Shown here piece after piece: positions 13,736 to 58,450 of a DNA stretch of 64,000 bases. Location of the stretch: positions 62,001 through 126,000 of the IMG/VR virus record IMGVR_UViG_3300050132_000038. One strand, 5' to 3'. A model generated the notes under the pieces. It saw nothing but the letters and a program-made list of their open reading frames with translations. It did not search any database and was not told the origin of the DNA. Each line of letters opens with the position of its first letter. Position 1 is the first letter of the stretch. A program made the position numbers and the translations under genes.

Positions 13736-13736
13736 C

Positions 13737-13874
13737 TCAGTCCTCGTTACGATTCTTATGTTTGCCGTACCCTTGCTTCTGCAAGTGCTTGCGATTGGCA
13801 AACCTAGAGCATCGGTTAATCTTCAACCCATATCTTGCTACTGGGTTACGAACCGAAGTCCGTACCTTAGTCAT
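13737..13874 (-). CDS. 45-aa basic peptide (not in ORF track)
   Basis: MTKVRTSVRNPVARYGLKINRCSRFANRKHLQKQGYGKHKNRNED fills the gap exactly between flanking genes. Confidence 0.65.
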   Translation of the reverse strand: MTKVRTSVRNPVARYGLKINRCSRFANRKHLQKQGYGKHKNRNED

Positions 13875-13877
13875 ATG

Positions 13878-14213
13878 CTACTCCTTGTCGAATTGGTGCA
13901 GCATTTCAAGCATCGTGGCATACCGTGATTCAATCGCCCAATGGTCAACCAGCACCCTCTGGTTTGCGGAACCCCAGGGAAACCGCATGAACACCCAATC
14001 GAAGTCCCGCTCATCTGCTTGAGCTGCAGGCATAACCCGAACCTCGTGGCCATCTAGCTTAGTTAAGTCCTCTAGCATTATTCGGAGCATATTCGCGTGG
14101 CTATGGCTATGGGTAATCACGCACACCTCGTAGCCCTCGCTGGATAATCGAATTGCCTCCTCTAACATTCGAGTTGTGCGCCCTGTCCCACGTTGCGTAT
14201 CAACATCGTACAT
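13878..14213 (-). CDS. Small P-loop-like phage protein
   Basis: QRGTGRTTRML and VLVDHW motifs. Confidence 0.7.
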   Translation of the reverse strand: MYDVDTQRGTGRTTRMLEEAIRLSSEGYEVCVITHSHSHANMLRIMLEDLTKLDGHEVRVMPAAQADERDFDWVFMRFPWGSANQRVLVDHWAIESRYATMLEMLHQFDKE

Positions 14214-14225
14214 AAAAGATTCTCC

Positions 14226-15740: not shown

Positions 15741-15748
15741 TTTAGTCC

Positions 15749-18292
15749 TTACGCTGCTTTACGTTTAATGAGGGCCTTCTTAACGGCTACCACTTTCTTT
15801 ACGGGAGCTTCCTCGGCGTCATTGCCCGTAGAACTGGAAGGTAAGCCTAGCATGTCTCTTCGGTACTGAACATTATCGTCCATCAACTTTACAAAATCCA
15901 CCTTATCATCGGATTCGATAGCTTTGATACGTATCACCTTACGAGTCTCTGGATTCATTGCGAGGATCCGCATGAGATTTGCGTCTAGCTCACCCCACCC
16001 TTTAATATGATTTACAAGGACCGTGGAGGGGGCTTTGAACTTCAGCAGTTTCTTCTGCGTCTCGGATACAGTGTCTCCTGTAATCAACTGCCCTTTGTGA
16101 ACTGCATAGAACTCAGGGGCATTTGACACGTACACCATACCCTTCTTGAATAGTTCGGGTAGGTAACGGTAGAATAGGGTTAGCAGCAGACTATTGATGT
16201 GACAGTTACTGGAGACGATACCAGAAGGTAGAATGAAGTTATGATAACGCGGGACCGTCAAACAGTAAACAGGTACAGGCTCCTTCAACTTCTGAATCCG
16301 CATCTTCGACACAGGGGCAAACCCAAGGCCGGTCAGCTTGTCACAGCTCGAGGGATTGCGTGACTTGTTGGACGAGGGAAGGAATACCCGATCGCCAATC
16401 TTCAAGTCCTCTGATGCAACATACACCAGATTATCGAAGTTTGTCGGCTGAGTACGACGACCATACATTGCATTGGTGACCAAACACATCCACTTATGCG
16501 ACATATCCACTTTGTACTTGGTACCTCCGATCTCCAAGGCAACGAGCGTGTCCACATTCTTAACTAGCTCTGCTGTTGCAGGTGCCCATGTCTCTTTAGC
16601 GCCAGTCCACACCGGAACTTCGAAGATGGGAGCTGCTACAGAGTACGGGCCACCGCGGTCTACGGCAGTAAGTTCGTAAATCTCCCGCTCATACTCTGAA
16701 CCATTTATACGAACTCGAATTTTGGTGTCACGCACAAACGGGCCGTCTGGGTCCGGGTCGGCCAAGCAGATGATCTTACCGATAGTCAGCTTCGAGTAGG
16801 GATCACTTGCTTTCACGTCGTAGCCAATTGCTGCCAGAATGTTAATCACTTCCTCTGACTCTAATGCCTTGCCCTTATTATCCTTTAAGCTGTTGAGAAT
16901 TTTCCCGCGAAGTGGAAGCACCCCTTGATATGGAAAACGAGCCTCCTTGGTCGTGCCCCCGGCACTGTCTCCCTCTACTAAGAACAGCTCCCGGTCCTGC
17001 GGTTTAGTCCGACTGTCGAATGCGGCATACTTTGCGGGTAGCCCATTGCGCTTTACCGCGTTGAGCTTGCCTGCTGCCTTCTTCGACATTGTGAACTTGG
17101 TCTTCAACTCATTCATCTGCGTAGCGCGGTCTGCAATGCGCTGAGCCAATGCCTTGTTCTCTTTGAAGAACTTCGTTGTCGCAAGCGTGAGGGCCGTTTC
17201 AAAGTCCTTACCCACTCGATCGTCAGTCAGCTTTGCCTTATCCTGGGAACTGAACTGTGCCTTGTGCAACTTTGCATTCACGAGGCCCACCAAACCTTCC
17301 TTCAAGTCGGCCTCACGGAATACCGGAACCTGCTTGCCGTCCACCTTCTTCGTTTTGATGAATGGCTTCAAGCCTGCATACAGAGCACCCGTTACTGAAT
17401 CAACGTGCTTACCGCCCTGCCCGTTGTTCAAACCATTAGTGAAGCCTCGCACATCACAGCCATCATAGTTTGAGAATGCGACAACCACATCAGCAAGGCT
17501 TGAGCTGTTCTCAAACATCTGACGCTCGCCCTCAGTCTTTAGCTTCAGCATACGCTGGGCTACGTACTCCGTCGGACCCTTCTTCGACAGAAATTGTTTT
17601 GCACCCTTTGCGCTACTTATAGTGATGGAGAACCCAGGGTTGAGGTATGACATAATCTCAGCCCACTCTACCGCCATTGATGCAGGAAATGACTTGGCTG
17701 AGAAGATGGTGGAGTCAGGCTTGAAATGGATCACCGTACCAGATGTAGGGCGCTTACCATTCCACAGCTTAGGTGCTGTCTTAGCCGCAGCAACAGGGGA
17801 CGTAAGTTTACCTTTCTTGAAACCAATCGTGTGCCATTTGCCTTTGAAGAAGGTACACGCGTCGAAGAAGTCAGCCGTGGCATTCGTGCCCTTCGCGCCT
17901 ACGCCGTGCGTGCCCACTGAAATCTTGTAAGCGTCATCACGATATTTGCCTGACGTATGCAATTCCCCGAACACTGCTTGCATAGTGGACATGGTGAAAA
18001 TCTTTTCACCGCTTCCCGTAGTTGCTTCCCACTTCTTAATGCCCTGCGGAATGCCGTGTCCATTGTCCGTCACCCAGTACGAACCGTCTGAGTCAACATG
18101 GAGATGCACCGAGTCGTTACGCCCAGCCAAGTGCTCGTCCAGTCCATTGTCGAGGAGCTCTCGGGCGCAAAGCCATACCCCGGAGGCATCCACACTGCCA
18201 AGATACATAGAGGGGTTTCGGCGGATTGATTCCGGGAATCGTAATGTCTCGATGTGACTGCTATCGTACTCTGCTACCTTCTTGGTTGCCAT
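15749..18292 (-). CDS. gyrB: Type IIA topoisomerase subunit B (GyrB/ParE-like) with intein
   Basis: ELLDNGLDE, DNGHGIP, GTHGVG, LFLVEGDSAGG, PLRGKILN, ADPDPDG...HINSLLLTLF. Confidence 0.95.
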   Translation of the reverse strand: MATKKVAEYDSSHIETLRFPESIRRNPSMYLGSVDASGVWLCARELLDNGLDEHLAGRNDSVHLHVDSDGSYWVTDNGHGIPQGIKKWEATTGSGEKIFTMSTMQAVFGELHTSGKYRDDAYKISVGTHGVGAKGTNATADFFDACTFFKGKWHTIGFKKGKLTSPVAAAKTAPKLWNGKRPTSGTVIHFKPDSTIFSAKSFPASMAVEWAEIMSYLNPGFSITISSAKGAKQFLSKKGPTEYVAQRMLKLKTEGERQMFENSSSLADVVVAFSNYDGCDVRGFTNGLNNGQGGKHVDSVTGALYAGLKPFIKTKKVDGKQVPVFREADLKEGLVGLVNAKLHKAQFSSQDKAKLTDDRVGKDFETALTLATTKFFKENKALAQRIADRATQMNELKTKFTMSKKAAGKLNAVKRNGLPAKYAAFDSRTKPQDRELFLVEGDSAGGTTKEARFPYQGVLPLRGKILNSLKDNKGKALESEEVINILAAIGYDVKASDPYSKLTIGKIICLADPDPDGPFVRDTKIRVRINGSEYEREIYELTAVDRGGPYSVAAPIFEVPVWTGAKETWAPATAELVKNVDTLVALEIGGTKYKVDMSHKWMCLVTNAMYGRRTQPTNFDNLVYVASEDLKIGDRVFLPSSNKSRNPSSCDKLTGLGFAPVSKMRIQKLKEPVPVYCLTVPRYHNFILPSGIVSSNCHINSLLLTLFYRYLPELFKKGMVYVSNAPEFYAVHKGQLITGDTVSETQKKLLKFKAPSTVLVNHIKGWGELDANLMRILAMNPETRKVIRIKAIESDDKVDFVKLMDDNVQYRRDMLGLPSSSTGNDAEEAPVKKVVAVKKALIKRKAA
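16205..16741 (-). mobile_element. 179-aa class 3 mini-intein in GyrB
   Basis: Insert PFVRDTKI...SHKW...VYCLTV...HNFILPSGIVSSN followed by +1 Cys; removing it restores DPDG-CHINSLLL. Confidence 0.88.
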
Positions 18293-44160: not shown

Positions 44161-45180
44161 CTAACTTACAGTGTTAAGAATCTTTCGTCTAATAGATTTT
44201 ATTTTCTTCCGCATAGCCTCGTCTACATCTAGGCTGGAAACCCAGGTGCGAAAGAAGTCTTCCGTCTTGAACGACACAGCCTGTCCCTCGGTTAAGTCTT
44301 CGGTGAGGACCATCTGCAGGTCCTCCTTCGACTTGAATGGCTTAATCATTACGATGTTTGAAAACTTACCGTAGTCCGATGCCGATACATCCGCCCCATC
44401 CTGGATGACTAGCTTCACTAGATTGAACCCACCCTCTGGAATAGTTGCCAGGTCATCTCGAGTGTTCAGTACGATAGTGTGCAGCTTGTATTTGGGGTCG
44501 TGCTTGACCAGCCGGATTTCGTAATCCTTCGGCCCGTTGAATTCTATGTGATGGAAATACTTTGGAAGGCTTTCTCCAAAGTTTTGTTGATATAGTGTTC
44601 CGCTGTAATACGTGTTACGGACTCTATGAGCGGTATGCAAATGTCCAGCGACGATAACGGACTTGGAGTCTGTAAGATCATCTGATCCCATGACACGCCC
44701 CGCGTCGTTCTTACTTCCGCGAACTTCTTTATGGTAGACATTGAGAGCCTTACTATCGAAGGATTCGTGAGGGTACGGGAGGAACCGAACTGGAGCACCG
44801 TCGATCTCTACCGTCTTTGGTTTAGTGTAGAACTTCACGTTAGACTTAGAGTACAAGAGCTTCAACAGTTCTAGGGAATGCCCGGTGTCCGGTGTTTCTC
44901 CATAGAGGTCATGGTTCCCTAGGATGATATGGAACGTGAAGTCATCGTTTGATGCAAGGAATCTTGAGAGGGCCATCATCCCCTGATACGAACCCCTGGG
45001 TGAATCAAAAATATCCCCGTACAGCAGAGTGGTATTGATCCCATGCTTCCTCCCGTATTGTAAAACCTTTTCCATCTCCTCCGTTACCATTTGATCGGAG
45101 TCCTGCACGTACTTCGATAGTCCACCCGACCCGTCTGCGCTCGACAGGTGCAGGTCCCCGATGCCCAAAAATTCAGCCAC
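44161..45180 (-). CDS. SbcD/Mre11 (T4 gp47-like) recombination nuclease subunit
   Basis: GDLHL, GDIFD, LGNHD, AGHLH, YSGTL..NFGE metallophosphoesterase motifs. Confidence 0.8.
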   Translation of the reverse strand: MAEFLGIGDLHLSSADGSGGLSKYVQDSDQMVTEEMEKVLQYGRKHGINTTLLYGDIFDSPRGSYQGMMALSRFLASNDDFTFHIILGNHDLYGETPDTGHSLELLKLLYSKSNVKFYTKPKTVEIDGAPVRFLPYPHESFDSKALNVYHKEVRGSKNDAGRVMGSDDLTDSKSVIVAGHLHTAHRVRNTYYSGTLYQQNFGESLPKYFHHIEFNGPKDYEIRLVKHDPKYKLHTIVLNTRDDLATIPEGGFNLVKLVIQDGADVSASDYGKFSNIVMIKPFKSKEDLQMVLTEDLTEGQAVSFKTEDFFRTWVSSLDVDEAMRKKIKSIRRKILNTVS

Positions 45181-45190
45181 AGCAATTCTC

Positions 45191-45382
45191 CTACTTCTTT
45201 AACTTAATACGAATCTCTACAGTTTCTTTCTTAGAGAAGTTTTCAGTTCCTACGTGATAGCGCCTACGAAGTACGATAGGGTCTAGGTTATCGCAAGCCT
45301 GTATCCAGCTGGAGGAAACAACATCGAGTTCCAGAGTGGAAGCACCGTCCTCGTCTAAACAGCTAATACTGAATACGCTCAT
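45191..45382 (-). CDS. Hypothetical protein
   Basis: Packed ORF. Confidence 0.55.
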   Translation of the reverse strand: MSVFSISCLDEDGASTLELDVVSSSWIQACDNLDPIVLRRRYHVGTENFSKKETVEIRIKLKK

Positions 45383-45594
45383 ATCAATACGCCACTAGGC
45401 CATGCTTTAGCTTCATTAAGACACCAGCCTAGGTAAAGACCCTCTACATAATCATCTAGATATCTACCGGCAGTGTCCTGAGTAAAATCAATTTTGGCGT
45501 CTGGGTAGTTGTCCTCAATCATAGATATGAATTTCTTCTGATTGTCCTCAGAGCCTAGTAGGGTTTTCCAACGCACACTACGATTAACTCTCAT
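45379..45594 (-). CDS. Hypothetical protein
   Basis: Packed ORF. Confidence 0.6.
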   Translation of the reverse strand: MRVNRSVRWKTLLGSEDNQKKFISMIEDNYPDAKIDFTQDTAGRYLDDYVEGLYLGWCLNEAKAWPSGVLI

Positions 45595-45778
45595 TAGTAT
45601 TCCTCCTCGTCAAACTCTAGTTCAAATCTAGCTTTGTGCTCTGTGCAGAACGTGTTGTACTTGCGATACTTGTTACCATCGTCGTCAGTAGGTAAAGTAT
45701 ATCCTACAGGTGCTCACAGTATTTGGCAACTACACCAGGAGAGTTAGGTATGAGGACCCATCTACAATTGTGAACCAT
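45594..45778 (-). pseudogene. Frameshifted Cys/His microgene
   Basis: MVHNCRWVLIPNSPGVVAKYCE continues in another frame as APVGYTLPTDDDGNKYRKYNTFCTEH...; 185 nt, one base short of a triplet multiple. Confidence 0.5.
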
Positions 45779-45779
45779 A

Positions 45780-46043
45780 TCAAATACCAATCAGTGTGTA
45801 GCCGTTCTCAAAAGCTTCGGCAGGACTGTAGGAGGTGTAGCCGTCTTCGTACACAACGTAGTAACCACCGGCTTGCGGTCTGTGTTTATAGTACCAGTCA
45901 TAGTCTATATACACAGGAGATAAGTTTGGGTCTGTAGGTACTATACACACGAGTGAGATACCATCCGGTGTTTCTTCATAGCTAACAGCGAGGATTTTGA
46001 AGGCGTGTACTTTCTTGTGGCTCTGGTATTGTGGCAAGTTCAT
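45780..46043 (-). CDS. Conserved small phage protein (GGYYVVYEDGY.S.SP..AFE type)
   Basis: LPQYQSHKKVHAFKI...GGYYVVYEDGYTSYSPAEAFENGY. Confidence 0.75.
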   Translation of the reverse strand: MNLPQYQSHKKVHAFKILAVSYEETPDGISLVCIVPTDPNLSPVYIDYDWYYKHRPQAGGYYVVYEDGYTSYSPAEAFENGYTLIGI

Positions 46044-46411
46044 TTCGATTCTCCGGTAAATAATTCCAAGATCTCATTCATCGTCGAACGAGAGAATGCT
46101 GTGTTACTTTTATCAGCGGCATGAATACGAAGGCGTTCAATTAAACTTGCATCTGGAACTTTGTTGGACAGGGGTTCCCAATCACGTTCAAAGACTTCAG
46201 CTGAGACAATCACTGCTTCCTCGCCGGATACAACGTAGTAGCTACCGGCCTCTATGTTGTGCCATTCTCGACGGCATAATGCCTTACTTATGTCGATATG
46301 CTCGCCGTCCTCTACTATAAGAACACCACGAAACGAATCTGGACCCGAGGCAATCTCTATGCGGGTAATCTTTGCGGCCATTACCCGTTCTTTCTGTTGG
46401 TACTCTTTCAT
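46040..46411 (-). CDS. Diverged paralog of 45780..46043
   Basis: AAKIT...GSYYVV...SAEVFERDW. Confidence 0.65.
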   Translation of the reverse strand: MKEYQQKERVMAAKITRIEIASGPDSFRGVLIVEDGEHIDISKALCRREWHNIEAGSYYVVSGEEAVIVSAEVFERDWEPLSNKVPDASLIERLRIHAADKSNTAFSRSTMNEILELFTGESK

Positions 46412-46425
46412 TTTAGCTTTCCTGG

Positions 46426-46659
46426 TTAGCCGAAGCGGTTACGCTGTTCCGTAACTGCGTAGTCAGCCCATAGACCTGCTAACTTCACTTTCCCCTCACC
46501 GGAGGTTACTAGTGTACCTTCTATCTTCCAGCCAGATGCTGAGATAGCAGTGGGGAGTAGTTTAAGAAAGGCAGCTGTCCAGAGCGTCTTGTCAGCGTGA
46601 TCCATCCCGTTTGTGGATACTGCTAGGTTAGGTATAGCTTCTTGAGCAGCGGTATTCAT
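46426..46659 (-). CDS. Hypothetical protein
   Basis: Packed ORF. Confidence 0.6.
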   Translation of the reverse strand: MNTAAQEAIPNLAVSTNGMDHADKTLWTAAFLKLLPTAISASGWKIEGTLVTSGEGKVKLAGLWADYAVTEQRNRFG

Positions 46660-46937
46660 TTTAGTTTCTTCTCCTCGTTCAACATCTCTGCCATGATCTC
46701 CTGCTTCGTACTGAGGAAATCTTGCATCGCCACGTTCCGGTCTGCATGGTGTTTCGCCCAGATGTCCTCCACCTGGTACATACGGAAGTCCTCAGGAGCA
46801 CGGAAGAACACGCTATACATTGATCTATGTGGGACGTGGGTGATAGAGATAACTGTTGCGCCTTCGTCCTCAACTATGTTGGCGAGGATTGCGGCGTCGT
46901 GTGTATCACTCGCAAACATCAAGTGTATCTTACTCAT
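46656..46937 (-). CDS. Hypothetical protein
   Basis: TGTAAATA at 46958-46965, 20 nt upstream of the ATG. Confidence 0.65.
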   Translation of the reverse strand: MSKIHLMFASDTHDAAILANIVEDEGATVISITHVPHRSMYSVFFRAPEDFRMYQVEDIWAKHHADRNVAMQDFLSTKQEIMAEMLNEEKKLK

Positions 46938-47070
46938 GGCTTCTCCGGTAACTAAGTTATTTACAGTGAATCCAGGAACATCTGGCCTATGTCTTCCAGT
47001 GAGGGCATAGTGGGCTGTGCGTCGGATTCTTGTAGAGCTTGTGCCTCATCTTCAGTTAGGATATTGTCCA

Positions 47071-47763
47071 TTACTTACTCCCGGAGGTCATGTTGTTGAT
47101 CGTAGCCTGTGCATCTTTTAGAATTGAGAGCTCTTGCGTAAGTTGTTCCCGTGCAAGAGCAGACTCCGCAACGAGCATCTTCTTATCGGCTATAGTCTGA
47201 GCCAACCGATCTTTCTCAGCTTGTGCGGCAGGTTCCGATAGCAGGCGTCGCGCTACTGAGGGATCTATAATCAAGATGGACTTGTCATTAACTCGATCCC
47301 AGAAGCCAGAGATCAATGATAACTTCGCCGGGGACACTAGGGCATGAACGTTGATAGGCAACCACGTCTGCGGGATAGTGAAGAAATCCTGATTCTGTTT
47401 AGCCTCGACTAGGCTGGCTAGAAGGTGCTTCTGTGCAGCGTGGTAATCACCCCACTTGTGCGCCCAATCCTTTTCTGCTGGAGGGTAGGGGAATATGTGA
47501 TCGTCAATAGGACGGGAGGTCAACGAGAATACAAACTCACCTGCAGCACCTAGTACATCTATTGAGTTGTTGAGTATCCAGAGCTCTTTGAGCTCAACTA
47601 CAGCGAGGACTTCGGGCTCGGCTTCTTTAGCCATAGACTCTATTGTGTCCTGCAACCGCTTGGCGTCCCAGTCTGGAGCCCATTCTATTTTGGTGAGGGT
47701 AGTTGTGGGTTTGGGTTTACCAGTCAGCCACTGCTTGAACTTGTGGTGAATTTTCTTAATCAT
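47071..47763 (-). CDS. Hypothetical protein (TWLP family domain)
   Basis: TIPQTWLPIN...IIDPSVARRLLSEPAAQAEKDRL. Confidence 0.7.
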   Translation of the reverse strand: MIKKIHHKFKQWLTGKPKPTTTLTKIEWAPDWDAKRLQDTIESMAKEAEPEVLAVVELKELWILNNSIDVLGAAGEFVFSLTSRPIDDHIFPYPPAEKDWAHKWGDYHAAQKHLLASLVEAKQNQDFFTIPQTWLPINVHALVSPAKLSLISGFWDRVNDKSILIIDPSVARRLLSEPAAQAEKDRLAQTIADKKMLVAESALAREQLTQELSILKDAQATINNMTSGSK

Positions 47764-48212
47764 TTGTTTTTCTCGTTGAAGATCGTGATGTAGTTGTTGA
47801 GTGGTACGTCTTCCCACCGTTCATATCTAAGCTTAGTCGAGGGATCGAACAAGGCAGAGCCATCCCAATAGACGACGTGCATCTCGTTCTCAAGATTTAG
47901 GGAGGGCACCTGGATGATAGCTCGACGACCCCACAGTAGGAGCCGGAGCATCGTAGTCTTTAACTCTACTAGACCGTGTGCGTCGGTGAGAAGGTAGCCA
48001 GCGTGGATTGACTGGAAATCTTTCTCCCATGTGAACCCTGCAATGTTCATAATCTTTTCGAGAACAGGACCGGAGGTACCCTTGAGGTCCATCTCGGCTA
48101 GTTCCTCGTGGGTTAGCTTCCCTCTAATGTATGCGTGACTAACGGAAGCAGCCATCGACACACAGCAGAGGTAGCAGTCTCGGTCTCTTCGTTGAGTAAT
48201 TAGTTCAGTCAT
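47760..48212 (-). CDS. Papain-like (C39-type) peptidase-fold protein
   Basis: QRRDRDCYLCCVSM (Q...C) and MHVVYWDG..LFDP (H...D). Confidence 0.6.
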   Translation of the reverse strand: MTELITQRRDRDCYLCCVSMAASVSHAYIRGKLTHEELAEMDLKGTSGPVLEKIMNIAGFTWEKDFQSIHAGYLLTDAHGLVELKTTMLRLLLWGRRAIIQVPSLNLENEMHVVYWDGSALFDPSTKLRYERWEDVPLNNYITIFNEKNK

Positions 48213-48396
48213 TGTGCCCACCGTTGTTATACATGTTGAGTAGTGCCGTGGCAATCAGTGGTACGTCCCACTCACGAACCTGCTTAGTGGAAGCCATCAA
48301 CTGGTTAGCCATTCGCATAGCCCATGGAGGAATGCCTTTGTAGTTACCATCTTCGTCGGGAGTGAAGCCCTCAGGTAGTCGCATGTCCGTGCTCAT
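48205..48396 (-). CDS. Hypothetical protein
   Basis: Start MSTDMR. Confidence 0.6.
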   Translation of the reverse strand: MSTDMRLPEGFTPDEDGNYKGIPPWAMRMANQLMASTKQVREWDVPLIATALLNMYNNGGHND

Positions 48397-48415
48397 TGAC
48401 GTTCTCCTACGGTTC

Positions 48416-48607
48416 TCATTGCTGCTCCCATTTAACAACGTCAGCTTTACCAGTGAACACGAGGTATGCCAACTTGAATCGTCTGAACAGATAGAGACCA
48501 GAGTAGCCGAGAGGACGACAGGGTACCCAGCGGCCGTTTACAAGTCTCAGCAGTTCTTTAGTTATAGTCGCAACGGACTCAGGTGAGTATAGACTAGGTA
48601 CGTTCAT
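48416..48607 (-). CDS. Hypothetical phage protein
   Basis: WVPCRPLGY...AYLVFTGKADVVKW. Confidence 0.7.
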   Translation of the reverse strand: MNVPSLYSPESVATITKELLRLVNGRWVPCRPLGYSGLYLFRRFKLAYLVFTGKADVVKWEQQ

Positions 48608-48837
48608 TTAATGCTCCCTATACGGACAAGGTCTTCAACGAGAACCACGGAAGGTTTGTACATCTCCAAGAAAGTAGTCCAGTCGGCACCCGTCATTCTC
48701 TTCTCTGAGGCCGCCGCCTCCTCGTTGGCGTAGCGAACAGGAATACCTAACGCTTTCATTAAGATTTCGATCTCGCCGAGGATGGCAGACTTACCCGAGC
48801 CTACTCTACCCCTTACTGTAATTGTGATTTCACTCAT
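48604..48837 (-). CDS. Hypothetical phage protein
   Basis: ITITVRGRVGSGKSAILGEIEILMKALG. Confidence 0.7.
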   Translation of the reverse strand: MSEITITVRGRVGSGKSAILGEIEILMKALGIPVRYANEEAAASEKRMTGADWTTFLEMYKPSVVLVEDLVRIGSIK

Positions 48838-48953
48838 ACGATGTTCCAAAGAAACAGGAAAAGGTCTAGTCCCATTTTACCAACTAGAAGGAGAATCATA
48901 CCTAAAACTATAATACATATTACGGCGAACAGCGCATCCATCAGGTGTCTCCT

Positions 48954-49190
48954 TTAGACGATAGCGCCAAACCGCTGCATCACAAGCTTCTGGTGAGCAC
49001 ACGCTAATAGCTCACTAGCATTAACAGGATCTGCACTGCCAAATCCTAAGACTGGTAGACCGGTAGCCTCAAGGACAACCACAGCGCCTATCGCCTTGCC
49101 GTACTTCCCATTCTCAAGATCATCGGCTAGCTGACGTAGCATTGCCGGTACGTCGCTTAAGTCTGAGGTAGGTAATTTCGTAACTGTCAT
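48954..49190 (-). CDS. Hypothetical phage protein
   Basis: DVPAMLRQLADDLENG. Confidence 0.7.
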   Translation of the reverse strand: MTVTKLPTSDLSDVPAMLRQLADDLENGKYGKAIGAVVVLEATGLPVLGFGSADPVNASELLACAHQKLVMQRFGAIV

Positions 49191-49606
49191 TATTGAGGGT
49201 CTCCGTATTCGTTCCAGTCGCTATCATCGTCTTTATCTTTGTAGCCAAGTATTGATAACCAGTCTACGTGTAGAGCTCTTGGGATCATAGGCATCTCTTG
49301 ACGCTCTCCATCCTTATAGTATTCGTACTCCTTCACTATAAGACTCTCAGGTGGGTTAAAGCCTAGGCTCCCTCGAAGGTTCAAATCGAACTCAGCACCA
49401 AACATCTCGAGTGTTGTAGGGTTTAGCACGGACACAAAGATAGAGCACGCAGTCCAGTTGTGTTGGGGATCGTCTGATCCAGCGTACTTACGTAACAGGG
49501 GTATCAGGGCTTCGGCTAGATTGTTAGAGTCGGTATCTATTGTTCCCACAAGATCAGCAGCTCCTCCCTGTTGACCGTACTGATCGGCAATGAAAACTAA
49601 GTACAT
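49190..49606 (-). CDS. Hypothetical protein
   Basis: Packed ORF. Confidence 0.65.
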   Translation of the reverse strand: MYLVFIADQYGQQGGAADLVGTIDTDSNNLAEALIPLLRKYAGSDDPQHNWTACSIFVSVLNPTTLEMFGAEFDLNLRGSLGFNPPESLIVKEYEYYKDGERQEMPMIPRALHVDWLSILGYKDKDDDSDWNEYGDPQ

Positions 49607-49776
49607 TGTCTTAACTCCTGTAGAGACGAATTACGGTGTACCATTGATCAGTGTTTCGTGGCGCTGCCTGGAGTTGCTGTATTGCATCCTCAGCTAACTG
49701 CGGCGTGGAGAAGTCTACGACCACAGAGGAAACTGCGCAGCCGTGGCTATCGCCTACGTGAGTGCTGATAAGTAGT

Positions 49777-50112
49777 TTAAACATTGGAGTCCTTTAGCTG
49801 TTGAACTGCTTGGTCTATAACCGAATCCATATCTAAATCGATCAAAGGTTGTTTCTTCGGATCTAAGATAACTTCAGTGTCAGAGTCTTCGTGGAGGAAC
49901 CCTGCGATCTCTGCGTTTCTCTCTGCTTGCCTGAATGTCTGAAGGGGAACCATCGCCATTAGAGCCAGACTAGTTTGCAGAAAGTTATGCAGGCGATCTA
50001 TATCTTGTTCGTCTACAAGTCCTCGTCGAACGTTGTTCAAAGTTCGTATAGTGTTCTTACGGTAGAGACCTATGATGTGATCTTTACCTCGTGAATCTTT
50101 CTTTGTGCTCAT
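49777..50112 (-). CDS. Hypothetical protein
   Basis: TGTAAATA upstream at 50148-50155. Confidence 0.7.
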   Translation of the reverse strand: MSTKKDSRGKDHIIGLYRKNTIRTLNNVRRGLVDEQDIDRLHNFLQTSLALMAMVPLQTFRQAERNAEIAGFLHEDSDTEVILDPKKQPLIDLDMDSVIDQAVQQLKDSNV

Positions 50113-50146
50113 CTTCTAGGCAGTTCTCAGTGAGACTAGTTATGAT

Positions 50147-50656
50147 TTATTTACAAGGGTACTCTTCACCGTAGTCCTCATCGTCACCGAACGGATCATC
50201 TGTAGGTTCACCGATGGAGAGTACCTTGATAAACCTGTAGCCTTTGGGATCATCAACTAGCGTGAGCGTATACACTGCGTAATGCACTTTCGGGTACACA
50301 GTGTCCTGGTAGGGTTGGACTTGTACAGCTTGAACCTTATAGAGCTCTCCGTTACACAGCTTAAACATAGAGGGGTAGAAGTATGGATCCTGCTCGAAGC
50401 ACTCCAGGCCGGTTATTGTTGAATCCTCGTAGAATAAAGTACACATGAGCTTCTGTGAGAACCCTGAGGCTGGGTTCGTACGGGTGAAGCGGGCGTGCAC
50501 TGGGTATTGAGCACCACCAGTAGGTAACTTTGATTTGACCTCGGGCTCAGGGTTAATCCAGGACTTCAAGATCTGAATCTGCTCCTTGGCAAGCTTTACT
50601 TTGTTCCACGAGGCTTCAGCGACTACCATGTTGAAGTCTTCGTCGATGATTATCAT
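50147..50656 (-). CDS. Hypothetical protein
   Basis: Packed ORF. Confidence 0.7.
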   Translation of the reverse strand: MIIIDEDFNMVVAEASWNKVKLAKEQIQILKSWINPEPEVKSKLPTGGAQYPVHARFTRTNPASGFSQKLMCTLFYEDSTITGLECFEQDPYFYPSMFKLCNGELYKVQAVQVQPYQDTVYPKVHYAVYTLTLVDDPKGYRFIKVLSIGEPTDDPFGDDEDYGEEYPCK

Positions 50657-50660
50657 TTAG

Positions 50661-51617
50661 TTACTCCTTGGTTAGAGTTGGTTGGCAGTAAGCAATTTCT
50701 AAGAAGGCTGCCAAGGACGCCGCGGTCGCCCTAAGTTCTTGCTGTCGCTCTTTAGACTGTCCCGCTAGTATTCGAATCCGTTTTATATTAGGTGCTGAAA
50801 ACGGTTTAACTTTAAATGGGGCCTCGACCTGTAAGGCAATTGCGGTCATAGGGACCTGCTCTAAGTCATCCATGCTATAAATTTTGTGAAGGTAGCCGCT
50901 ATTCTTCTTAGCGGCCCTCTCTACTTTTTCTACAGTAACGATGGCAGGTTTAACTTTCTTAATGACCCGGGACAGGTGCCCCTCAGAGGTTACTTGAGAA
51001 TAGCCGAGCAGATTACATTTCTCGATCTTCCATAGCTCATCTGACTTGTAGTTTATGTAGTGGAAAGCGGGATCAGAATTATTTGCCAGTGTGCCCGCGT
51101 AGAAGGTGTTTCTAAATCGTAATTCTCTGTGCAGGTGTCCAGCTACAGTAACAGCATCACTCTTCTTCATTCCTACCTTAAAGTCCAAGCCTAACTTCTT
51201 TTCAACTTCGGGGACAGCAGCGTGGACTACATTCAGAGCATCGAACATTAGTCGCGCATGAGGCCACGGATTAAAGTTTACGTGAGCTCCGTCTATGTCT
51301 ACCACTTCGGCCCTAGAACTGAAGACGGTAACGTTATGAGCTCTGAGCAGATCTAGGCTACAGGAGGATGCTTCCCGATTGTTAAAGAGATCATGATTAC
51401 CAGCGATGATCCAGAAGCGTAGGTCATTGTACTCGGCAAATAGTTTTCGTAGCTTGCGGACAACGGTAAGGTCACCATCCTCTACAAGGTCCCCGTACTG
51501 AAAGATATTTTGTATCCTCCTCTTTCTCGCAATGTCACAGACGTGAGAAATCCTGAACAGGCGCGATTTCATGTTGGTAGGTTCGAGATGCAGATCTGCT
51601 ATCCCTAGTGCTCTCAT
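50661..51617 (-). CDS. Second SbcD/Mre11-like metallophosphoesterase
   Basis: ADLHL, YGDLVE, AGNHD, AGHLH, YAGTL. Confidence 0.75.
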   Translation of the reverse strand: MRALGIADLHLEPTNMKSRLFRISHVCDIARKRRIQNIFQYGDLVEDGDLTVVRKLRKLFAEYNDLRFWIIAGNHDLFNNREASSCSLDLLRAHNVTVFSSRAEVVDIDGAHVNFNPWPHARLMFDALNVVHAAVPEVEKKLGLDFKVGMKKSDAVTVAGHLHRELRFRNTFYAGTLANNSDPAFHYINYKSDELWKIEKCNLLGYSQVTSEGHLSRVIKKVKPAIVTVEKVERAAKKNSGYLHKIYSMDDLEQVPMTAIALQVEAPFKVKPFSAPNIKRIRILAGQSKERQQELRATAASLAAFLEIAYCQPTLTKE

Positions 51618-52921
51618 TTCGTTTGGTCCACGTAAGTAGGTTTAGAGAAGTCGAGCTTCAGTGTGGCAGCGGCCTGGGCTAATCTCTTCGACTCCCGCGT
51701 TTTAGTCAAGATACCTGATAGCTCTTCCAAGTATAACGCCGCCCCCTTCGCAGATGATAACCACCGCTTAGTATGATCCTTCGTATTGGTCAACAGCCCT
51801 GCCTGCCCCTGCAGCATAATCAGATGCGCGTCAGGTGAAATGTCTAAACTTAGGTTCAATGATTCCGCCCACGTTACTAACCGAGGATCCCACGCAACCT
51901 TCTTCTTCCCTGCGTTAGTCTTGTACTCCTCTTCCCATAGCTTCATCATCCCTCGATGCTGTAGAGCAAATGGATTGTCTACAGTCACCATGTAGGATAA
52001 GCACGTACGCTCTATAGCATAGGTCATCAACGCTTCCACCGCACCTTTCCAGCCACGCTCAGGATACTCCCGCTTCACGTAGTCATACAAACCTTTGATA
52101 GTAGGCTTGGCCCCTAAACTCCAATAGTTCTTTAGATAGTAGTTACTCACAGTAAGATCGAACCGCAATCGTTTCTCCAGGTCCTGCTCCTCTTCACTAC
52201 CCATTGCCTTCTCGTTATCACGCTTCTCCTGTGCTTTATTATAAAGACACAGATGCATTAGCTTGTTACCCTTCCCTAACTTATCGCCTTTAGCATAGAT
52301 CGCCAAGGCTATTGAATCATCGTACTGATCCCCTACGCTACGCTTCATAGCTAATTCTTGCAACAGTGATATGTAACGTTCTCCGGTGTGCAGCCGCGTC
52401 TCATACATAAAATACCAACGATCAATCAATTCTCTCATTAGCTTTTCATTCTTCAATGGTGAACTATACTGCGCGAACGTTACTGAATGAATGTTGATAT
52501 TCCCAATCTTTACCTGCTGCGTTAGCCGGGTAACGTCTACACCCTTCTTACCCAGGAACTCTAGTACAAAGTAGAATATATCCTGCACCTGTGTCCGTAG
52601 CTTCAAGTTACCGAACGTATTGTCCCCACTGAACACTGATGCTGGATTAGCTAACACATTGAAGAACCATGTGGATCCTGCACGACCATCCTGTCGTAGT
52701 GTTACTGTTATTGCTGAACCTAGCTTCTTGAACTTCCCTGGGTTCATAATGAATATGATTCCCCCATCCTTATCGCGCAGTCCTCCATTCTTTTCCATTA
52801 CAGCCATTAGCTTCTTACTTTCCTTATCAGAGCATTCAACACCATTACTCTCGAAGGTCGTATCATCAACATCTAGGTCTGTTCCCATATTGATATTGTC
52901 CACCATTGCGTATGTCTTCAT
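51614..52921 (-). CDS. Rep_trans / phage gene II-X-like replication initiator homolog
   Basis: ANPASVFSGDNTFG, LCLYNKAQEKRDN (resembles the catalytic IYNKKQERKDN of pT181-family Rep), LRFDLTV. Confidence 0.65.
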   Translation of the reverse strand: MKTYAMVDNINMGTDLDVDDTTFESNGVECSDKESKKLMAVMEKNGGLRDKDGGIIFIMNPGKFKKLGSAITVTLRQDGRAGSTWFFNVLANPASVFSGDNTFGNLKLRTQVQDIFYFVLEFLGKKGVDVTRLTQQVKIGNINIHSVTFAQYSSPLKNEKLMRELIDRWYFMYETRLHTGERYISLLQELAMKRSVGDQYDDSIALAIYAKGDKLGKGNKLMHLCLYNKAQEKRDNEKAMGSEEEQDLEKRLRFDLTVSNYYLKNYWSLGAKPTIKGLYDYVKREYPERGWKGAVEALMTYAIERTCLSYMVTVDNPFALQHRGMMKLWEEEYKTNAGKKKVAWDPRLVTWAESLNLSLDISPDAHLIMLQGQAGLLTNTKDHTKRWLSSAKGAALYLEELSGILTKTRESKRLAQAAATLKLDFSKPTYVDQTK

Positions 52922-52950
52922 TGCCCTATCCCTTACCTTGATCTATGAAT

Positions 52951-53121
52951 CTACACATACCTAAACTATGTGTAGTCTATTTACATGCGTATTCGTTACC
53001 TGCGTATTCACCCTGAGTTAAACTATGTGTAACTATTCATGCAATTAATACACTTACTCATATATATTGATATTGTTATATTATACCCAAACTCAGGGTT
53101 ACTCATAGTTAAACTATGTGT
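52951..53121. repeat. Iteron-like direct repeats, inverted repeats and AT-rich core at the strand switch
   Basis: TAAACTATGTGT at 52962, 53019, 53110; ccctgagtt/aactcaggg at 53011 and 53090; ctacacata/tatgtgtag hairpin at 52951-52975. Confidence 0.8.
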
Positions 53122-53222
53122 GAGATACCCATATCGAGATGACGTATCATTTAACGAAAATGAAATTGTAGGGTGTGGATTCCTGCGTACCTATAGTTTG
53201 GATATAAGTAAAAAAATCTACC

Positions 53223-53230
53223 TGTAAATA
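53223..53230 (+). promoter_or_regulatory. TGTAAATA promoter starting the + strand block
   Basis: Exact motif 28 nt before the ATG; its divergent partner is at 52978-52985 on the - strand. Confidence 0.65.
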
Positions 53231-53258
53231 ACTAGTGTTCAACGTGGAGACTTATACA

Positions 53259-53576
53259 ATGACTGATGAAGAAGCGTACCGAGGATGGTTAGCTCGCAAG
53301 AACGGAGTAGCAGCTACAGCACACGAGGCTTTCCTCGCAGGGGTCAAACGTTACAAGGAGTTGTGGCTTCGAGAGCAAGAACTCAACTTACAGATGGAAG
53401 CTGAACTTCAGAGCGGTAGTCTGCCCTCTAGTCGTTACACCTTCGATCCTCATAATGTATTCGATCAATGGTTGATCCGCAACTTCAAGACTGGTGACAT
53501 TACCTCACGAGAACATAACCTGATGTTTAGCGTGTGGTACGCTCTCAAATCTGATAAGGAGAATCACAATGATTGA
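53259..53576 (+). CDS. Hypothetical protein
   Basis: Start MTDEEA with RBS GGAG. Confidence 0.7.
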   Translation: MTDEEAYRGWLARKNGVAATAHEAFLAGVKRYKELWLREQELNLQMEAELQSGSLPSSRYTFDPHNVFDQWLIRNFKTGDITSREHNLMFSVWYALKSDKENHND

Positions 53577-53838
53577 ACTAACCGATGACCAGCTTGATGA
53601 CATTTGGGATGCAATACCTGACTCTATTGACTATCGTTCTTTTGAGGAAGCAGAACGAGACTTTCGCTTGAAGTTTGCACGAGCTGTACTGCGGGTAGCC
53701 TACCCCGAAGCACAATGGATTACAAGATTACGCGTTGAAGTTACGCTCTCCAAGATGACTCACAACTTTACGTTCACCCGCGATGAAGTCATCGAGTTGT
53801 TAGGTGGTAAATTCAATCTGTTAAAGGATTCAAAGTGA
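53569..53838 (+). CDS. Hypothetical protein
   Basis: MIELTDDQLDDIW...FARAV phage-type start. Confidence 0.65.
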   Translation: MIELTDDQLDDIWDAIPDSIDYRSFEEAERDFRLKFARAVLRVAYPEAQWITRLRVEVTLSKMTHNFTFTRDEVIELLGGKFNLLKDSK

Positions 53839-54083
53839 ATGAAGAATGGAAACAATCTGTTATCGAAGGGCTGATGATGCTGACGGGCACTGCTAGACGG
53901 GGTACCCCTCGTAAAGCTAAACTAGCACGGAAGTACAGCTATACCCGTACCACATTATCCTTCTGGTACAAGGGAGCAGTACCCAAAGTAAGCTGTAGTT
54001 CTGCTCGCATAGACATCAAACCCGTGGAGCTCCCTTTACAAGTAACTCAGGTGCAGCTAGAGTACACAGGAGAACGCAAGTGA
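53835..54083 (+). CDS. Hypothetical protein
   Basis: Packed ORF. Confidence 0.55.
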   Translation: MNEEWKQSVIEGLMMLTGTARRGTPRKAKLARKYSYTRTTLSFWYKGAVPKVSCSSARIDIKPVELPLQVTQVQLEYTGERK

Positions 54084-54373
54084 GTGATGACCAAATCATA
54101 CCTACTACCGTTATCAAACAGCTTCTAAACGTCTTAGCGTTCTACGGTAACGAACGCAACATCGAGTGGGTAACGTTTCAGAAGGGGAAGCGTGAGCAGC
54201 AACTTAAGCGGCTACAGAATGACTCCTCCTGGCAACAAACTGGTGAAGACCATCGGGGTCATGAGGAGTTTAGAGAGAATGGGAAACAAGCTCTCGACGT
54301 ACTATCCGCCCTTGAGCAAGCTCTACCCGATTCCTTCTGGGATAGCGTAGAAGTACAAAAGGAAACCATATGA
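54080..54373 (+). CDS. Hypothetical protein
   Basis: Packed ORF. Confidence 0.6.
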   Translation: MSDDQIIPTTVIKQLLNVLAFYGNERNIEWVTFQKGKREQQLKRLQNDSSWQQTGEDHRGHEEFRENGKQALDVLSALEQALPDSFWDSVEVQKETI

Positions 54374-54804
54374 TAGTTACATCTGACATGCTGCAAGTGT
54401 TTCTCGAACGTATGCAGTACAATCGCCACCGTCCGGTCTCGTATAAATATGCACTCTACACAGCAGTGCAAGCAGCAATTAAGTTAGACCCTACGTTAGA
54501 TCCGATGCTTGAGAGTGACCACCACGAACTTGAAGCATCTCTGGTAGCCGAATGTGTAATGAGCCATCTGTATGACTTTGCATCGTCCTACAACTCTGAA
54601 TCTATTAGTGATCCCATTCTCTACGCTAATAAGCACGAAGCCATTAAAGAGGTGTTAGCCCAATTAGCACATAAGCACGAAGCCATTAAAGAGGTGTTAG
54701 CCCAATTAGCACGAGGAACCTTCTCACTGTATGACAACCCGTACCAAGAGATCTGTTCAAGCAGTACCCACCTGACACCGAGGATTCAAAATGAGCAAGG
54801 GTGA
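54370..54804 (+). CDS. Hypothetical protein with internal 14-aa duplication
   Basis: KHEAIKEVLAQLA twice. Confidence 0.6.
   Translation: MIVTSDMLQVFLERMQYNRHRPVSYKYALYTAVQAAIKLDPTLDPMLESDHHELEASLVAECVMSHLYDFASSYNSESISDPILYANKHEAIKEVLAQLAHKHEAIKEVLAQLARGTFSLYDNPYQEICSSSTHLTPRIQNEQG
54629..54712. repeat. Perfect 42-nt tandem duplication
   Basis: ataagcacgaagccattaaagaggtgttagcccaattagcac x2. Confidence 0.9.
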
Positions 54805-58442: not shown

Positions 58443-58450
58443 TGTAAATA
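58443..58450 (+). promoter_or_regulatory. TGTAAATA putative late promoter
   Basis: Directly after a stop codon, 18 nt before the ATG at 58469. Confidence 0.65.

What the first reader, a model, noticed from the sequence alone, without database searches (positions are those of the whole stretch)
51614..53235. Rolling-circle-type initiator beside an iteron-like region at the transcription divergence point
Seen: a 435-aa protein with NPASVFSGDNTFG (gene II/X-type NPxKxxxGHNVFG), LYNKAQEKRDN (like the catalytic-Tyr segment of pT181-family Rep) and LRFDLTV; the usual RxDxAxD acidic motif seems replaced (IHSVTFAQ). Immediately upstream are three TAAACTATGTGT repeats, a 9-bp hairpin, a 9-bp inverted pair enclosing an AT-rich core, and back-to-back TGTAAATA promoters. 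Established: Rep_trans enzymes nick a hairpin origin in small plasmids and filamentous phages and are unexpected in a jumbo-type genome. Inference: either the phage origin is run by a co-opted Rep, or this is a domesticated plasmid/satellite remnant.
Basis: partly seen in the sequence, partly recalled or inferred. Interest (0 to 1): 0.75.

Follow-up and report, generated by a model that had tools for sequence, protein, structure and literature searches.

The report
Nicking replication initiator in jumbo phage
A 219-kb uncultivated peat phage carries a gene for a DNA-nicking replication starter of the type used by tiny filamentous phages and staphylococcal plasmids, next to a hairpin-and-repeat region that looks like its origin; the same arrangement recurs in other large uncultivated phages, which suggests a previously undescribed way for big phages to start copying their DNA.

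Summary
The ORF at 51614..52921 (-) encodes 435 aa. It passes Pfam Phage_CRI (gene II protein) above the curated cut-off. Its AF2 model matches the only solved Rep_trans structures best (RepDE, RepSTK1).

Across 78 diverse relatives, Y227, K229, R253 and N92 are invariant. D8 is Asp in 74 of 78 and residue 255 is always D or E. Y227-N-K229-A-Q-E232 aligns with the Tyr191 segment of RepC and with the M13 gpII Tyr197 segment. Motif I (RxD) is missing: T148 replaces the third metal ligand, a state inherited stably in two large clades.

Upstream, the 12-mer TAAACTATGTGT occurs three times and nowhere else in the 218,861-bp genome. One copy lies in a hairpin with a 9-bp stem and a 7-nt loop. Homologous hairpins with compensatory stem changes and a conserved loop (CCTAAAC, CTCTAAC) sit upstream of rep in related phages.

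In 10 of 13 informative loci, rep is the first gene at a divergent, promoter-flanked intergenic region of a large phage contig. Cultured relatives (phiRSL1, BcepSaruman, BCSR5) lack the gene.

Best reading (about 0.6): a working origin-specific nickase that starts phage replication. The skew minimum coincides with the site but follows gene orientation, so it is not independent evidence. Nicking is untested.

The parts
51614..52921 (-). rep gene, 435 aa. Phage_CRI/Rep_trans-type initiator. The catalytic crescent domain spans about res 1-264 (nt 52130-52921); the helical C-terminal domain spans about res 265-435 (nt 51617-52129).
   Evidence: ORF. Pfam PF05144 above cut-off. PHROG 702 'replication protein'. 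AF2 model, pLDDT 74.6. Fold matches to RepDE, RepSTK1 and TBP.
52241..52243 (-). Codon of Tyr227, the predicted nucleophile, in Y227-N-K229-A-Q-E232.
   Evidence: Y227 and K229 are invariant in 78 of 78 relatives. HMMER aligns this segment with the M13 gpII RTLVAYLKHVE segment (Tyr197) and the RepC IRIYNKKQE segment (Tyr191). The codon was read directly.
50661..51617 (-). Downstream gene, 318 aa. Calcineurin-like (SbcD/Mre11-like) metallophosphoesterase. Its start overlaps the rep stop codon by ATGA.
   Evidence: Pfam Metallophos_2 and Metallophos; PHROG 100. It is a paralog of the SbcD-like gene at 44161-45180. Metallophos genes also lie beside rep in L004, L026 and L041.
52951..52975 (+). 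Hairpin H1 with a 9-bp stem and the 7-nt loop CCTAAAC. This is the proposed nick-site hairpin. The predicted nick is on the + strand between T52962 and A52963. It contains iteron 1.
   Evidence: Homologous hairpins occur in L034, L032 and L039: 96.7% of cells are paired and 8 of 10 pairs carry compensatory changes. A TAAAC loop also occurs in L041. The layout resembles pT181 ICRII.
52962..52973 (+). Iteron 1, TAAACTATGTGT.
53019..53030 (+). Iteron 2, TAAACTATGTGT.
53110..53121 (+). Iteron 3, TAAACTATGTGT. It forms the right arm of the near-perfect palindrome 53101-53121.
52978..52985 (-). Phage promoter-like motif TGTAAATA facing rep, 57 nt upstream of the ATG. Hairpin H1 lies just downstream of it.
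   Evidence: 45 co-oriented copies in the genome.
52981..53009 (+). Two tandem 14-nt repeats, TTAC[A/C]TGCGTATTC, 15 nt apart. They overlap the rep promoter motif.
   Evidence: They are unique in the genome.
53010..53099 (.). 10-bp inverted pair ACCCTGAGTT / AACTCAGGGT enclosing an AT-rich core (22-27% GC). This is the candidate DNA-unwinding element.
53223..53230 (+). Phage promoter-like motif TGTAAATA facing the right arm.
53259..53576 (+). First gene of the right arm, about 105 aa, no family match. The listed GTG at 53235 lies too close to the promoter motif to be the start.

Best explanation
The 435-aa protein is a working, origin-specific, tyrosine-dependent DNA nickase of the Phage_CRI/Rep_trans superfamily. 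It serves as the replication initiator of this 219-kb phiRSL1-like phage.

Proposed mechanism, all inferred:
1. A Rep dimer binds the three TAAACTATGTGT units, probably through its helical C-terminal domain.
2. Negative supercoiling and the adjacent 22%-GC core let hairpin H1 extrude.
3. Tyr227 attacks the loop. By analogy with the CTCT/AATA of pT181 and the CTTT/AATA of Ff phages, the cut falls at CCT/AAAC, + strand 52962/52963. The protein becomes covalently joined to the 5' end.
4. The free 3'-OH primes leading-strand synthesis by the phage's own family-A polymerase and DnaB-like helicase. This yields rolling-circle (sigma) concatemers or seeds forks.
5. Because H1 and the 14-nt repeats overlap the rep promoter, Rep binding probably also represses its own gene.

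Shown here: the fold and family, conservation of the catalytic residues, uniqueness of the repeats, conservation and covariation of the hairpin, and the recurrent position of the gene. Not shown: binding, nicking, the nick position, and origin function.
For: Family: Pfam PF05144 scores 23.9 bits against a cut-off of 21.7. 56 of 78 relatives hit PF05144, best E 2.9e-12.

Active site: N92, Y227, K229 and R253 are invariant. D8 is present in 74 of 78, residue 255 is D or E in 78 of 78, and E232 is E or Q in 75 of 78. HMMER aligns the motif with the gpII Tyr197 and RepC Tyr191 segments.

Repeats: they are unique to this locus.

Hairpin: the stem is kept through compensatory changes while the asymmetric loop is conserved, in loci whose Reps are 39-48% identical. 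The same division of labour is described for pT181 plasmids: ICRII is the conserved nick hairpin and ICRIII the Rep-specific repeat (PMC4797284).

Position: rep is the first gene at a divergent intergenic region in 10 distinct large-phage loci. These include a second, collinear 215-kb genome.

Integration into the phage: rep has a phage-type promoter and is translationally coupled to the next gene.

Replisome: the phage encodes PolA and a DnaB-like helicase. No other initiator was identified, but only a few families were searched for.
Against: No biochemical evidence exists.

Motif I (RxD) is absent. T148 replaces one of the three metal ligands and S146 replaces the Arg.

The GC and AT skew minimum at the site follows gene orientation, so it does not support an origin independently.

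A purely unidirectional rolling circle would run head-on into transcription of one whole arm.

Polarity is not fixed. Rep lies on opposite sides of the divergence in G000 and G001. The loop strand relative to rep is flipped in L034 and L041.

Concerted change of both arms of a palindrome is also what a dimeric operator would show.

The cultured relatives phiRSL1, BcepSaruman and BCSR5 replicate without this gene.
Confidence: 0.6

Rival explanations
1. Exapted DNA-binding regulator. The protein keeps the Rep fold and binds the palindromes and iterons to control the two divergent promoters, but it no longer nicks DNA. Replication starts by another route.
For: Motif I with one metal ligand is lost. 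The hairpin and the 14-nt repeats overlap the rep promoter motif. Concerted change of palindrome arms fits a dimeric operator. Cultured relatives lack the gene.
Against: Y227, K229 and R253 are invariant and D8 and D/E255 nearly so, across 78 clusters at 17-50% identity (most under 30%), including both clades that lack the acidic residue 148. A pure binder would not need them. The asymmetric loop is better conserved than the arms, the reverse of a typical operator.
Confidence: 0.12
2. Site-specific nickase for another DNA transaction. It makes a nick that the adjacent SbcD/Mre11-like nuclease processes, to start recombination-dependent replication, resolve concatemers or mark the genome. It does not prime leading-strand synthesis directly.
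For: rep overlaps a Metallophos (SbcD-like) gene by ATGA. Metallophos genes also neighbour rep in L004, L026 and L041. The variable polarity of the module argues against a fixed unidirectional fork.
Against: The association with Metallophos is loose. In G001 the nearest SbcD-like gene lies about 4 kb away on the other arm. The layout of hairpin, direct repeats and AT-rich core is that of a double-strand origin.
Confidence: 0.12
3. Remnant or passenger of a small rolling-circle plasmid, satellite or inovirus captured by the phage, with its own origin, and irrelevant to phage replication.
For: Classical members of the family belong to small replicons (PMC5714925). The gene is absent from phiRSL1, BcepSaruman and BCSR5. 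Local GC is slightly lower than the genome's.
Against: No relative was found by tblastn in 72,556 plasmids or 50,697 phage genomes, nor by a pattern scan in about 185,000 species genomes. All contexts seen are phage contigs, up to 218 kb. The gene keeps its position in two collinear genomes. It has a phage-type promoter and is coupled to the next gene. No integrase or flanking repeats were seen.
Confidence: 0.06

Closest known systems
Gene II protein (gpII) of Ff/IKe filamentous phages, Pfam Phage_CRI PF05144
   Same: The HMM match is above the cut-off. Size is similar: 410-421 aa against 435 aa. The N-P...G-x-N-x-x-G loop, Y-x-K-x-x-E and R-x-[ED] motifs align. In both, the origin combines a nick-site hairpin with nearby repeats; the M13 hairpin was checked.
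   Different: The replicon is 219 kb of dsDNA in a tailed phage, against 6.4 kb of ssDNA. The motif I Arg and Asp are absent. No match to the gene X / C-terminal family exceeds lead level. The relationship is remote: hhalign probability is 60%, and hhalign mis-registers the Tyr.
pT181-family RepC/RepD and RepSTK1, Pfam Rep_trans PF02486
   Same: They are the best structural matches. RepC IRIYNKKQE resembles the LCLYNKAQE found here. The pT181 ICRII hairpin has a 9-bp stem and the loop CTCTAA. The hairpin here has a 9-bp stem and the loop CCTAAAC; the sister locus L034 has the loop CTCTAAC.
   Different: The PF02486 HMM does not match. The R-x-D-x-A-x-D strand reads S-x-T-x-A-x-Y. The C-terminal domain is much larger. 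The phage encodes no PcrA/UvrD-type helicase.
Phage P2 gpA and phiX174 gpA (HUH endonucleases)
   Same: They are functional analogues. P2 is a tailed dsDNA phage that starts rolling-circle replication with its own nicking protein (my own knowledge).
   Different: The fold is unrelated: HUH, with the catalytic Tyr on a helix (PMC5714925). P2 is about 33 kb.
MOBT relaxases (NicK of ICEBs1, Orf20 of Tn916)
   Same: They belong to the Rep_trans fold family. NicK is among the top fold hits.
   Different: They act in conjugative transfer. No conjugation genes are present here.
Iteron-type plasmid origins (RepA/pi type)
   Same: The layout is shared: direct repeats beside an AT-rich region, overlapping the initiator's promoter.
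   Different: Those initiators are winged-helix proteins that melt DNA and do not nick it. The resemblance is in layout only.

Membership tests
Phage_CRI (PF05144, gpII-type initiators) | Profile HMM score above Pfam's gathering cut-off | tested here: met
   23.9 bits against 21.7, res 69-264. 56 of 78 relatives also match.
Phage_CRI / Rep_trans superfamily | Motif III, Y-x-K-x-x-E, with the nucleophilic Tyr at the end of a beta-strand | tested here: met
   Y227-N-K229-A-Q-E232 follows strand 220-227 of the model. Y and K are invariant. The segment aligns with the gpII Tyr197 and RepC Tyr191 segments.
Phage_CRI / Rep_trans superfamily | Motif IV, [WL]-x-R-x-E (metal ligand) | tested here: met
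   R251-L-R253-F-D255. R253 is invariant and residue 255 is D in 69 and E in 9 of 78. Asp stands for Glu, and Arg stands at the W/L position.
Phage_CRI / Rep_trans superfamily | Motif N', the N-terminal Asp (metal ligand) | tested here: met
   D8 is present in 74 of 78. It corresponds to RepSTK1 D9 and RepD D46 (PMC4797284).
Phage_CRI / Rep_trans superfamily | Motif I, R-x-D (third metal ligand; R-x-D-x-A-x-D in Rep_trans) | tested here: not met
   The strand reads S146-V-T148-F-A150-Q-Y152. Column 148 is E in 38 and A, T or S in 40 of 78. The non-acidic state defines two clades.
Phage_CRI / Rep_trans superfamily | Motif II, [TS]-x-[YE]-x-G | tested here: inconclusive
   S203 is conserved (S in 42 and T in 8 of 78). 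The Y/E and G positions could not be placed without a structural superposition.
Rep_trans (PF02486) | Profile HMM match | tested here: not met
   No match in the genome even at E <= 1.
Rep_trans (PF02486) | Crescent-shaped, TBP-like curved beta-sheet catalytic fold | tested here: met
Rolling-circle initiators in general | Site-specific nicking with a covalent 5'-phosphotyrosyl adduct; divalent-metal dependence | not testable with these tools
   Needs biochemistry.
Rolling-circle double-strand origin | Nick-site hairpin with a conserved loop, next to initiator-specific repeats | tested here: met
   Hairpin 52951-75 plus three unique 12-mers. The stem covaries and the loop is conserved in 4 loci. 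The nick itself is unproven.
Iteron-type theta origin | Winged-helix RepA-type initiator | tested here: not met
   The adjacent initiator has the Rep_trans fold. No RepA-type family was hit.

The most novel reading that the evidence does not exclude
A previously undescribed clade of Phage_CRI-like nickases (at least 86 clusters at 50% identity) serves as the replication-origin initiator of large and jumbo tailed phages. It has been seen only in uncultivated, mostly large phage contigs.

In this reading the initiator-origin module is swappable at a conserved divergent 'origin' locus. phiRSL1 has a DEAD-like helicase gene (ORF295) at the syntenic divergence and no Rep. This phage has Rep and no ORF295.

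Two clades of the family would work with a re-modelled metal site that lacks the motif I carboxylate, a change coupled to a D-to-N switch next to the catalytic Tyr.
Probability: 0.35. Interest if true: 0.75.

Novelty: new variant of a known kind. Interest (0 to 1): 0.62.

Why it matters
How most jumbo phages start replication is unknown, and no origin has been defined for the phiRSL1-like group as far as I could find. This locus offers a concrete, testable candidate origin with a predicted initiator, a predicted catalytic residue and a predicted nick site.

It would extend the gpII/Rep_trans initiators from small (kilobase-scale) plasmids, ssDNA phages and conjugative elements to dsDNA genomes above 200 kb. 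It would also give a natural series of cognate Rep-hairpin pairs for studying specificity.

In addition, it supplies two large clades in which one carboxylate of the published D-D-E metal site is replaced. That bears on how this enzyme family binds its metal.

The protein family is absent from cultured phages, plasmids and the species genomes searched. Current annotation pipelines therefore leave it as 'hypothetical'.

Tried and rejected
Searches that found nothing:
- tblastn of this Rep and of two distant relatives (P0016, P0040) against 50,697 phage genomes, and of this Rep against 72,556 plasmids.
- megablast of the locus against phages.
- PDB sequence-profile search, which returned only chance hits.
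- NCBIfam.
- Rfam on the intergenic region.
- A sigma-70 promoter scan.

Misleading alignment: hhalign to IKe gpII aligned the family Tyr to a second Y-x-K segment of gpII rather than to the Tyr197 equivalent. I rejected this in favour of the HMMER alignment and the strand-helix-strand topology.

Skew: the cumulative GC and AT skew minimum falls exactly at the locus in G000 and in G001. I rejected it as independent origin evidence because minus-strand genes in the right arm carry the same skew as the left arm.

Reads: the runs are held only as assembler contigs. No read ends, nick signal or depth gradient could be obtained.

Locus scans: the metagenome scan gave only 3 loci, all duplicates of known ones. 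The genome-collection scan with A1 found none.

Partner helicase: a search for a phage-encoded SF1 (PcrA/RecD-like) helicase found none in this genome.

C-terminal domain: the ESM Atlas gave only lead-level hints to G2P_X_C, Rep_trans and Phage_CRI clusters.
Full report
SETTING

The window is bases 62001-126000 of a 218,861-bp virus record. Its 127-bp exact end repeat is most likely the overlap of a circular or permuted assembly. Public runs that hold the sequence are peat metagenomes.

The phage encodes topoisomerase II, RtcB and an SbcD-like nuclease, a family-A DNA polymerase and a DnaB-like helicase. Its topoisomerase is 63% identical to that of Ralstonia jumbo phage phiRSL1, and 48-56% to those of Burkholderia phages BcepSaruman, BcepSauron and BCSR5. 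It is therefore an uncultivated phiRSL1-like jumbo phage.

A crude ORF map shows almost all genes on the minus strand from 1.9 to 114.9 kb and on the plus strand from 115 to 183 kb. The finding sits exactly at this main divergence point.

THE OBSERVATION

- The ORF 51614..52921 (-) encodes 435 aa with the quoted peptide motifs.
- TAAACTATGTGT occurs three times in direct orientation, at 52962, 53019 and 53110. Shuffles predict 0.23 matches. The genome has no other exact copy.
- The hairpin at 52951-52975 has a 9-bp stem and a 7-nt loop.
- A 10-bp inverted pair (53010-19 / 53090-99) encloses a core of 22-27% GC.
- The octamer TGTAAATA occurs 45 times in the genome, always pointing the same way as the local genes. 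It lies mostly in intergenic DNA or near gene ends, typically some tens of bases upstream of a start codon. Near-variants occur 1-10 times. It is evidently the phage's own promoter element.
- Two copies of that octamer face outward from the repeat region, one toward rep and one toward the right arm.
- Contigs from three runs cover 50500-54658 without a single difference.

THE PROTEIN

Family and fold. Pfam Phage_CRI (the N-terminal domain of filamentous-phage gene II protein) matches residues 69-264 at 23.9 bits, above the 21.7-bit cut-off. PHROG 702 'replication protein' matches weakly.

Active site. An exhaustive profile search found 86 clusters of relatives. In an alignment of 78 of them, N92, Y227, K229 and R253 are invariant. 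D8, N88, P93, N101, G104, A150, Y152 and R251 are nearly so. Residue 255 is always Asp or Glu, and residue 232 is Glu or Gln in 75.

The published motif set is N' (Asp), I (RxD), II, III (YxKxxE) and IV (xRxE) (PMC5714925; PMC4797284). Against it, this protein has N' (D8), III (Y227-N-K229-A-Q-E232) and IV (R253-F-D255). HMMER aligns motif III with the M13 gpII segment RTLVAYLKHVE, in which Tyr197 falls by my count of the translated gene. That this Tyr is the nucleophile is from my own knowledge. HMMER also aligns it with RepC IRIYNKKQE, which holds Tyr191. hhalign put the Tyr on a second YxK segment of IKe gpII. I consider that a local mis-registration.

Motif I is not met. In the wider family this position is Glu in 38 clusters and Ala, Thr or Ser in 40. 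It co-varies with the residue after the catalytic Tyr: YDK goes with Glu and YNK mostly with the non-acidic state. On a maximum-likelihood tree the state changes only twice. This protein sits in a 16-member clade (support 100/99) that is entirely non-acidic. Both non-acidic clades keep the Tyr, Lys, Arg and the two other carboxylates invariant over long divergence. This argues that the enzyme still works with a re-modelled metal site rather than being dead. That is inference.

THE DNA ELEMENT AND ITS RELATIVES

The strongest new evidence is comparative.

Second genome. A 215-kb collinear genome (G001) has a Rep that is 39% identical, at its own main divergence point. Four 26-nt quasi-palindromic repeats of different sequence lie upstream.

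Closest relatives. Homologous hairpins lie upstream of rep in four loci:

| Locus | Rep relation to this one | Hairpin (stem - loop - stem) |
|---|---|---|
| This window | - | CTACACATA - CCTAAAC - TATGTGTAG |
| L034 | sister on the tree, 47% identical | TTACACATA - CTCTAAC - TATGTGTAA, two exact 24-nt copies |
| L032 | 48% identical | TATCCTATA - CCTAAAC - TATAGGATA, read on the complementary strand |
| L039 | 39% identical | TTACACCCTA - CCAAAGT - T[GA]G[GC]GTGTAA, two copies |

L041 has an 8-bp GC-rich stem around the loop TAAAC.

An ungapped alignment of six units shows 96.7% of stem cells paired and 8 of 10 pairs with changes on both sides. No shuffle out of 500 reaches this, and the slid controls give 23-54%. 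The innermost two pairs and loop positions C11 and A15 are invariant.

Both arms of a palindrome would also change together if it were the operator of a dimeric protein. What favours a nick-site hairpin is that the asymmetric centre is the conserved part while the arms change with the protein. This is the pattern described for pT181 plasmids: a conserved ICRII stem-loop carries the nick at its tip, next to a plasmid-specific ICRIII repeat (PMC4797284).

The pT181 hairpin, read from the plasmid itself, is AACCGGCTA-CTCTAA-TAGCCGGTT. The M13 origin hairpin contains GTTCTTTAATA. From my own knowledge both are cut between T and A in YT/AA. By analogy the cut here would be CCT/AAAC, between T52962 and A52963 on the + strand. 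That position is also the first base of each 12-mer.

POSITION

Rep is the first gene of one arm at a divergent intergenic region of 270-490 bp in 10 distinct loci: G000, G001, L004, L026, L028, L032, L034, L039, L041 and L042. Several of these come from long contigs:

| Locus | Contig length |
|---|---|
| G000 | 218 kb |
| G001 | 215 kb |
| L028 | 195 kb |
| L042 | 134 kb |
| L026 | 95 kb |

In three loci the upstream gene is co-directional. Two loci are uninformative.

In several loci the region is bounded by back-to-back copies of the local promoter motif. Replication genes lie close by in some: PolA in L035 and a RecD-like helicase in L034.

No relative was found in cultured phages, plasmids or about 185,000 species genomes. 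phiRSL1, BcepSaruman and BCSR5 have no homologue even by profile search.

WHAT DOES NOT COUNT AS EVIDENCE

The global minimum of cumulative GC and AT skew falls at 114-115 kb in G000 and at 139-140 kb, the Rep upstream region, in G001. However, minus-strand genes in the right arm have the same negative GC skew (-0.041) as the left arm (-0.046), while plus-strand genes there have +0.026. The skew therefore tracks the coding strand, and the coincidence adds nothing beyond the strand switch itself.

MECHANISM AND ITS WEAK POINTS

I propose that Rep binds the repeats and that the AT-rich core and supercoiling expose hairpin H1. Tyr227 then nicks the loop and stays attached to the 5' end. The 3'-OH primes the phage polymerase, giving sigma-type replication and concatemers for packaging. 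Rep also represses its own promoter, which H1 and the 14-nt repeats overlap.

Several points weigh against a simple picture.
- A unidirectional fork would meet head-on transcription over one arm.
- The module is inverted between G000 and G001. Rep is on the left arm in one and the right arm in the other, although the genomes are collinear.
- The loop strand relative to rep is flipped in L034 and L041.
- One metal ligand is missing.
- No SF1 helicase partner is encoded.

A nick that seeds bidirectional forks, or a nick processed by the adjacent SbcD/Mre11-like phosphoesterase into a recombination-dependent start, remains open. That phosphoesterase gene overlaps the rep stop by ATGA, and similar genes neighbour rep in L004, L026 and L041.

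COMPARISON AND NOVELTY

In fold and chemistry this is a gpII/Rep_trans-type initiator, which is a known kind. Four things are new:
- The setting: jumbo and other large tailed phages. I found no paper describing this.
- The existence of a sizeable family restricted to uncultivated phages.
- The altered metal site.
- A conserved origin-like module at the main transcription divergence.

In phiRSL1 the syntenic divergence has a DEAD-like helicase gene (ORF295) opposite the SbcD-like gene and no Rep. This phage has no ORF295 homologue. That hints at exchange of initiators at a fixed locus, but it rests on one comparison.

VERDICT

The most likely function is an origin-specific nicking initiator (about 0.6). 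It is a new variant of a known kind, of moderate to high interest, and directly testable in vitro.

Noticed in passing
whole genome; in the window e.g. 52978-52985 (-), 53223-53230 (+), 58443-58450 (+): TGTAAATA (often CTGTAAATA) is a genome-wide promoter-like motif. There are 45 copies: all 28 left of 115 kb are on the minus strand and all 17 right of it on the plus strand. Many lie in intergenic DNA, typically tens of bases before a start codon. It resembles the T4 late promoter TATAAATA. Related phages use AGTAAATA.
   Followed up: partly
window 54370-54804 (+), repeat at about 54629-54700: This ORF contains an in-frame tandem duplication of a 14-residue segment (HKHEAIKEVLAQLA twice). The assembler contigs of three runs break exactly there, with raised word depth.
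   Followed up: no
window 44161-45180 (-) and 50661-51617 (-): There are two SbcD/Mre11-like metallophosphoesterase paralogs. The first is 64% identical to G001's and 56% to phiRSL1 ORF296. The second, 35% identical to G001's copy of the first, is the one coupled to rep, and it has an unassigned C-terminal part of about 140 aa.
   Followed up: partly
L045 (phiRSL1 202619-205983) versus window 44161-53259: In phiRSL1 the SbcD-like gene is the first gene at a 536-bp divergent region opposite ORF295 (DEAD-like helicase). This phage has no ORF295 homologue, and phiRSL1 has no Rep. This may reflect a swap of initiators at a conserved divergence point.
   Followed up: partly
G001 (L002 5700-7341; genome 139.8-141.4 kb) versus window 51614-53235: The two genomes are collinear, but rep lies on opposite strands and opposite sides of the divergence. 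The origin-rep module is inverted.
   Followed up: partly
L034 3137/3176 and L039 2815/2854: The two hairpin units are spaced exactly 39 nt start to start in both loci, although their sequences differ.
   Followed up: no
alignment A2, columns of residues 148 and 228: Glu148 goes with Asp228 (YDK) and Thr/Ala/Ser148 mostly with Asn228 (YNK). This is a coupled change in the active site that needs only two changes on the tree.
   Followed up: yes
genome ends (outside the window): The 'direct terminal repeat' of the record is an exact 127-bp overlap. This is probably an assembler k-mer artefact of a circular or permuted genome rather than a true terminal repeat.
   Followed up: no
window 53039-53227 (+): This 62-aa ORF spans the AT-rich core and iteron 3. 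It has no promoter motif upstream and no family match, so it is probably not a gene.
   Followed up: no
window 2348-2422 (-); 12539-18292 (-): A tRNA-Gln(TTG) gene, and a block of genes for RtcB RNA ligase and the topoisomerase II small and large subunits.
   Followed up: no
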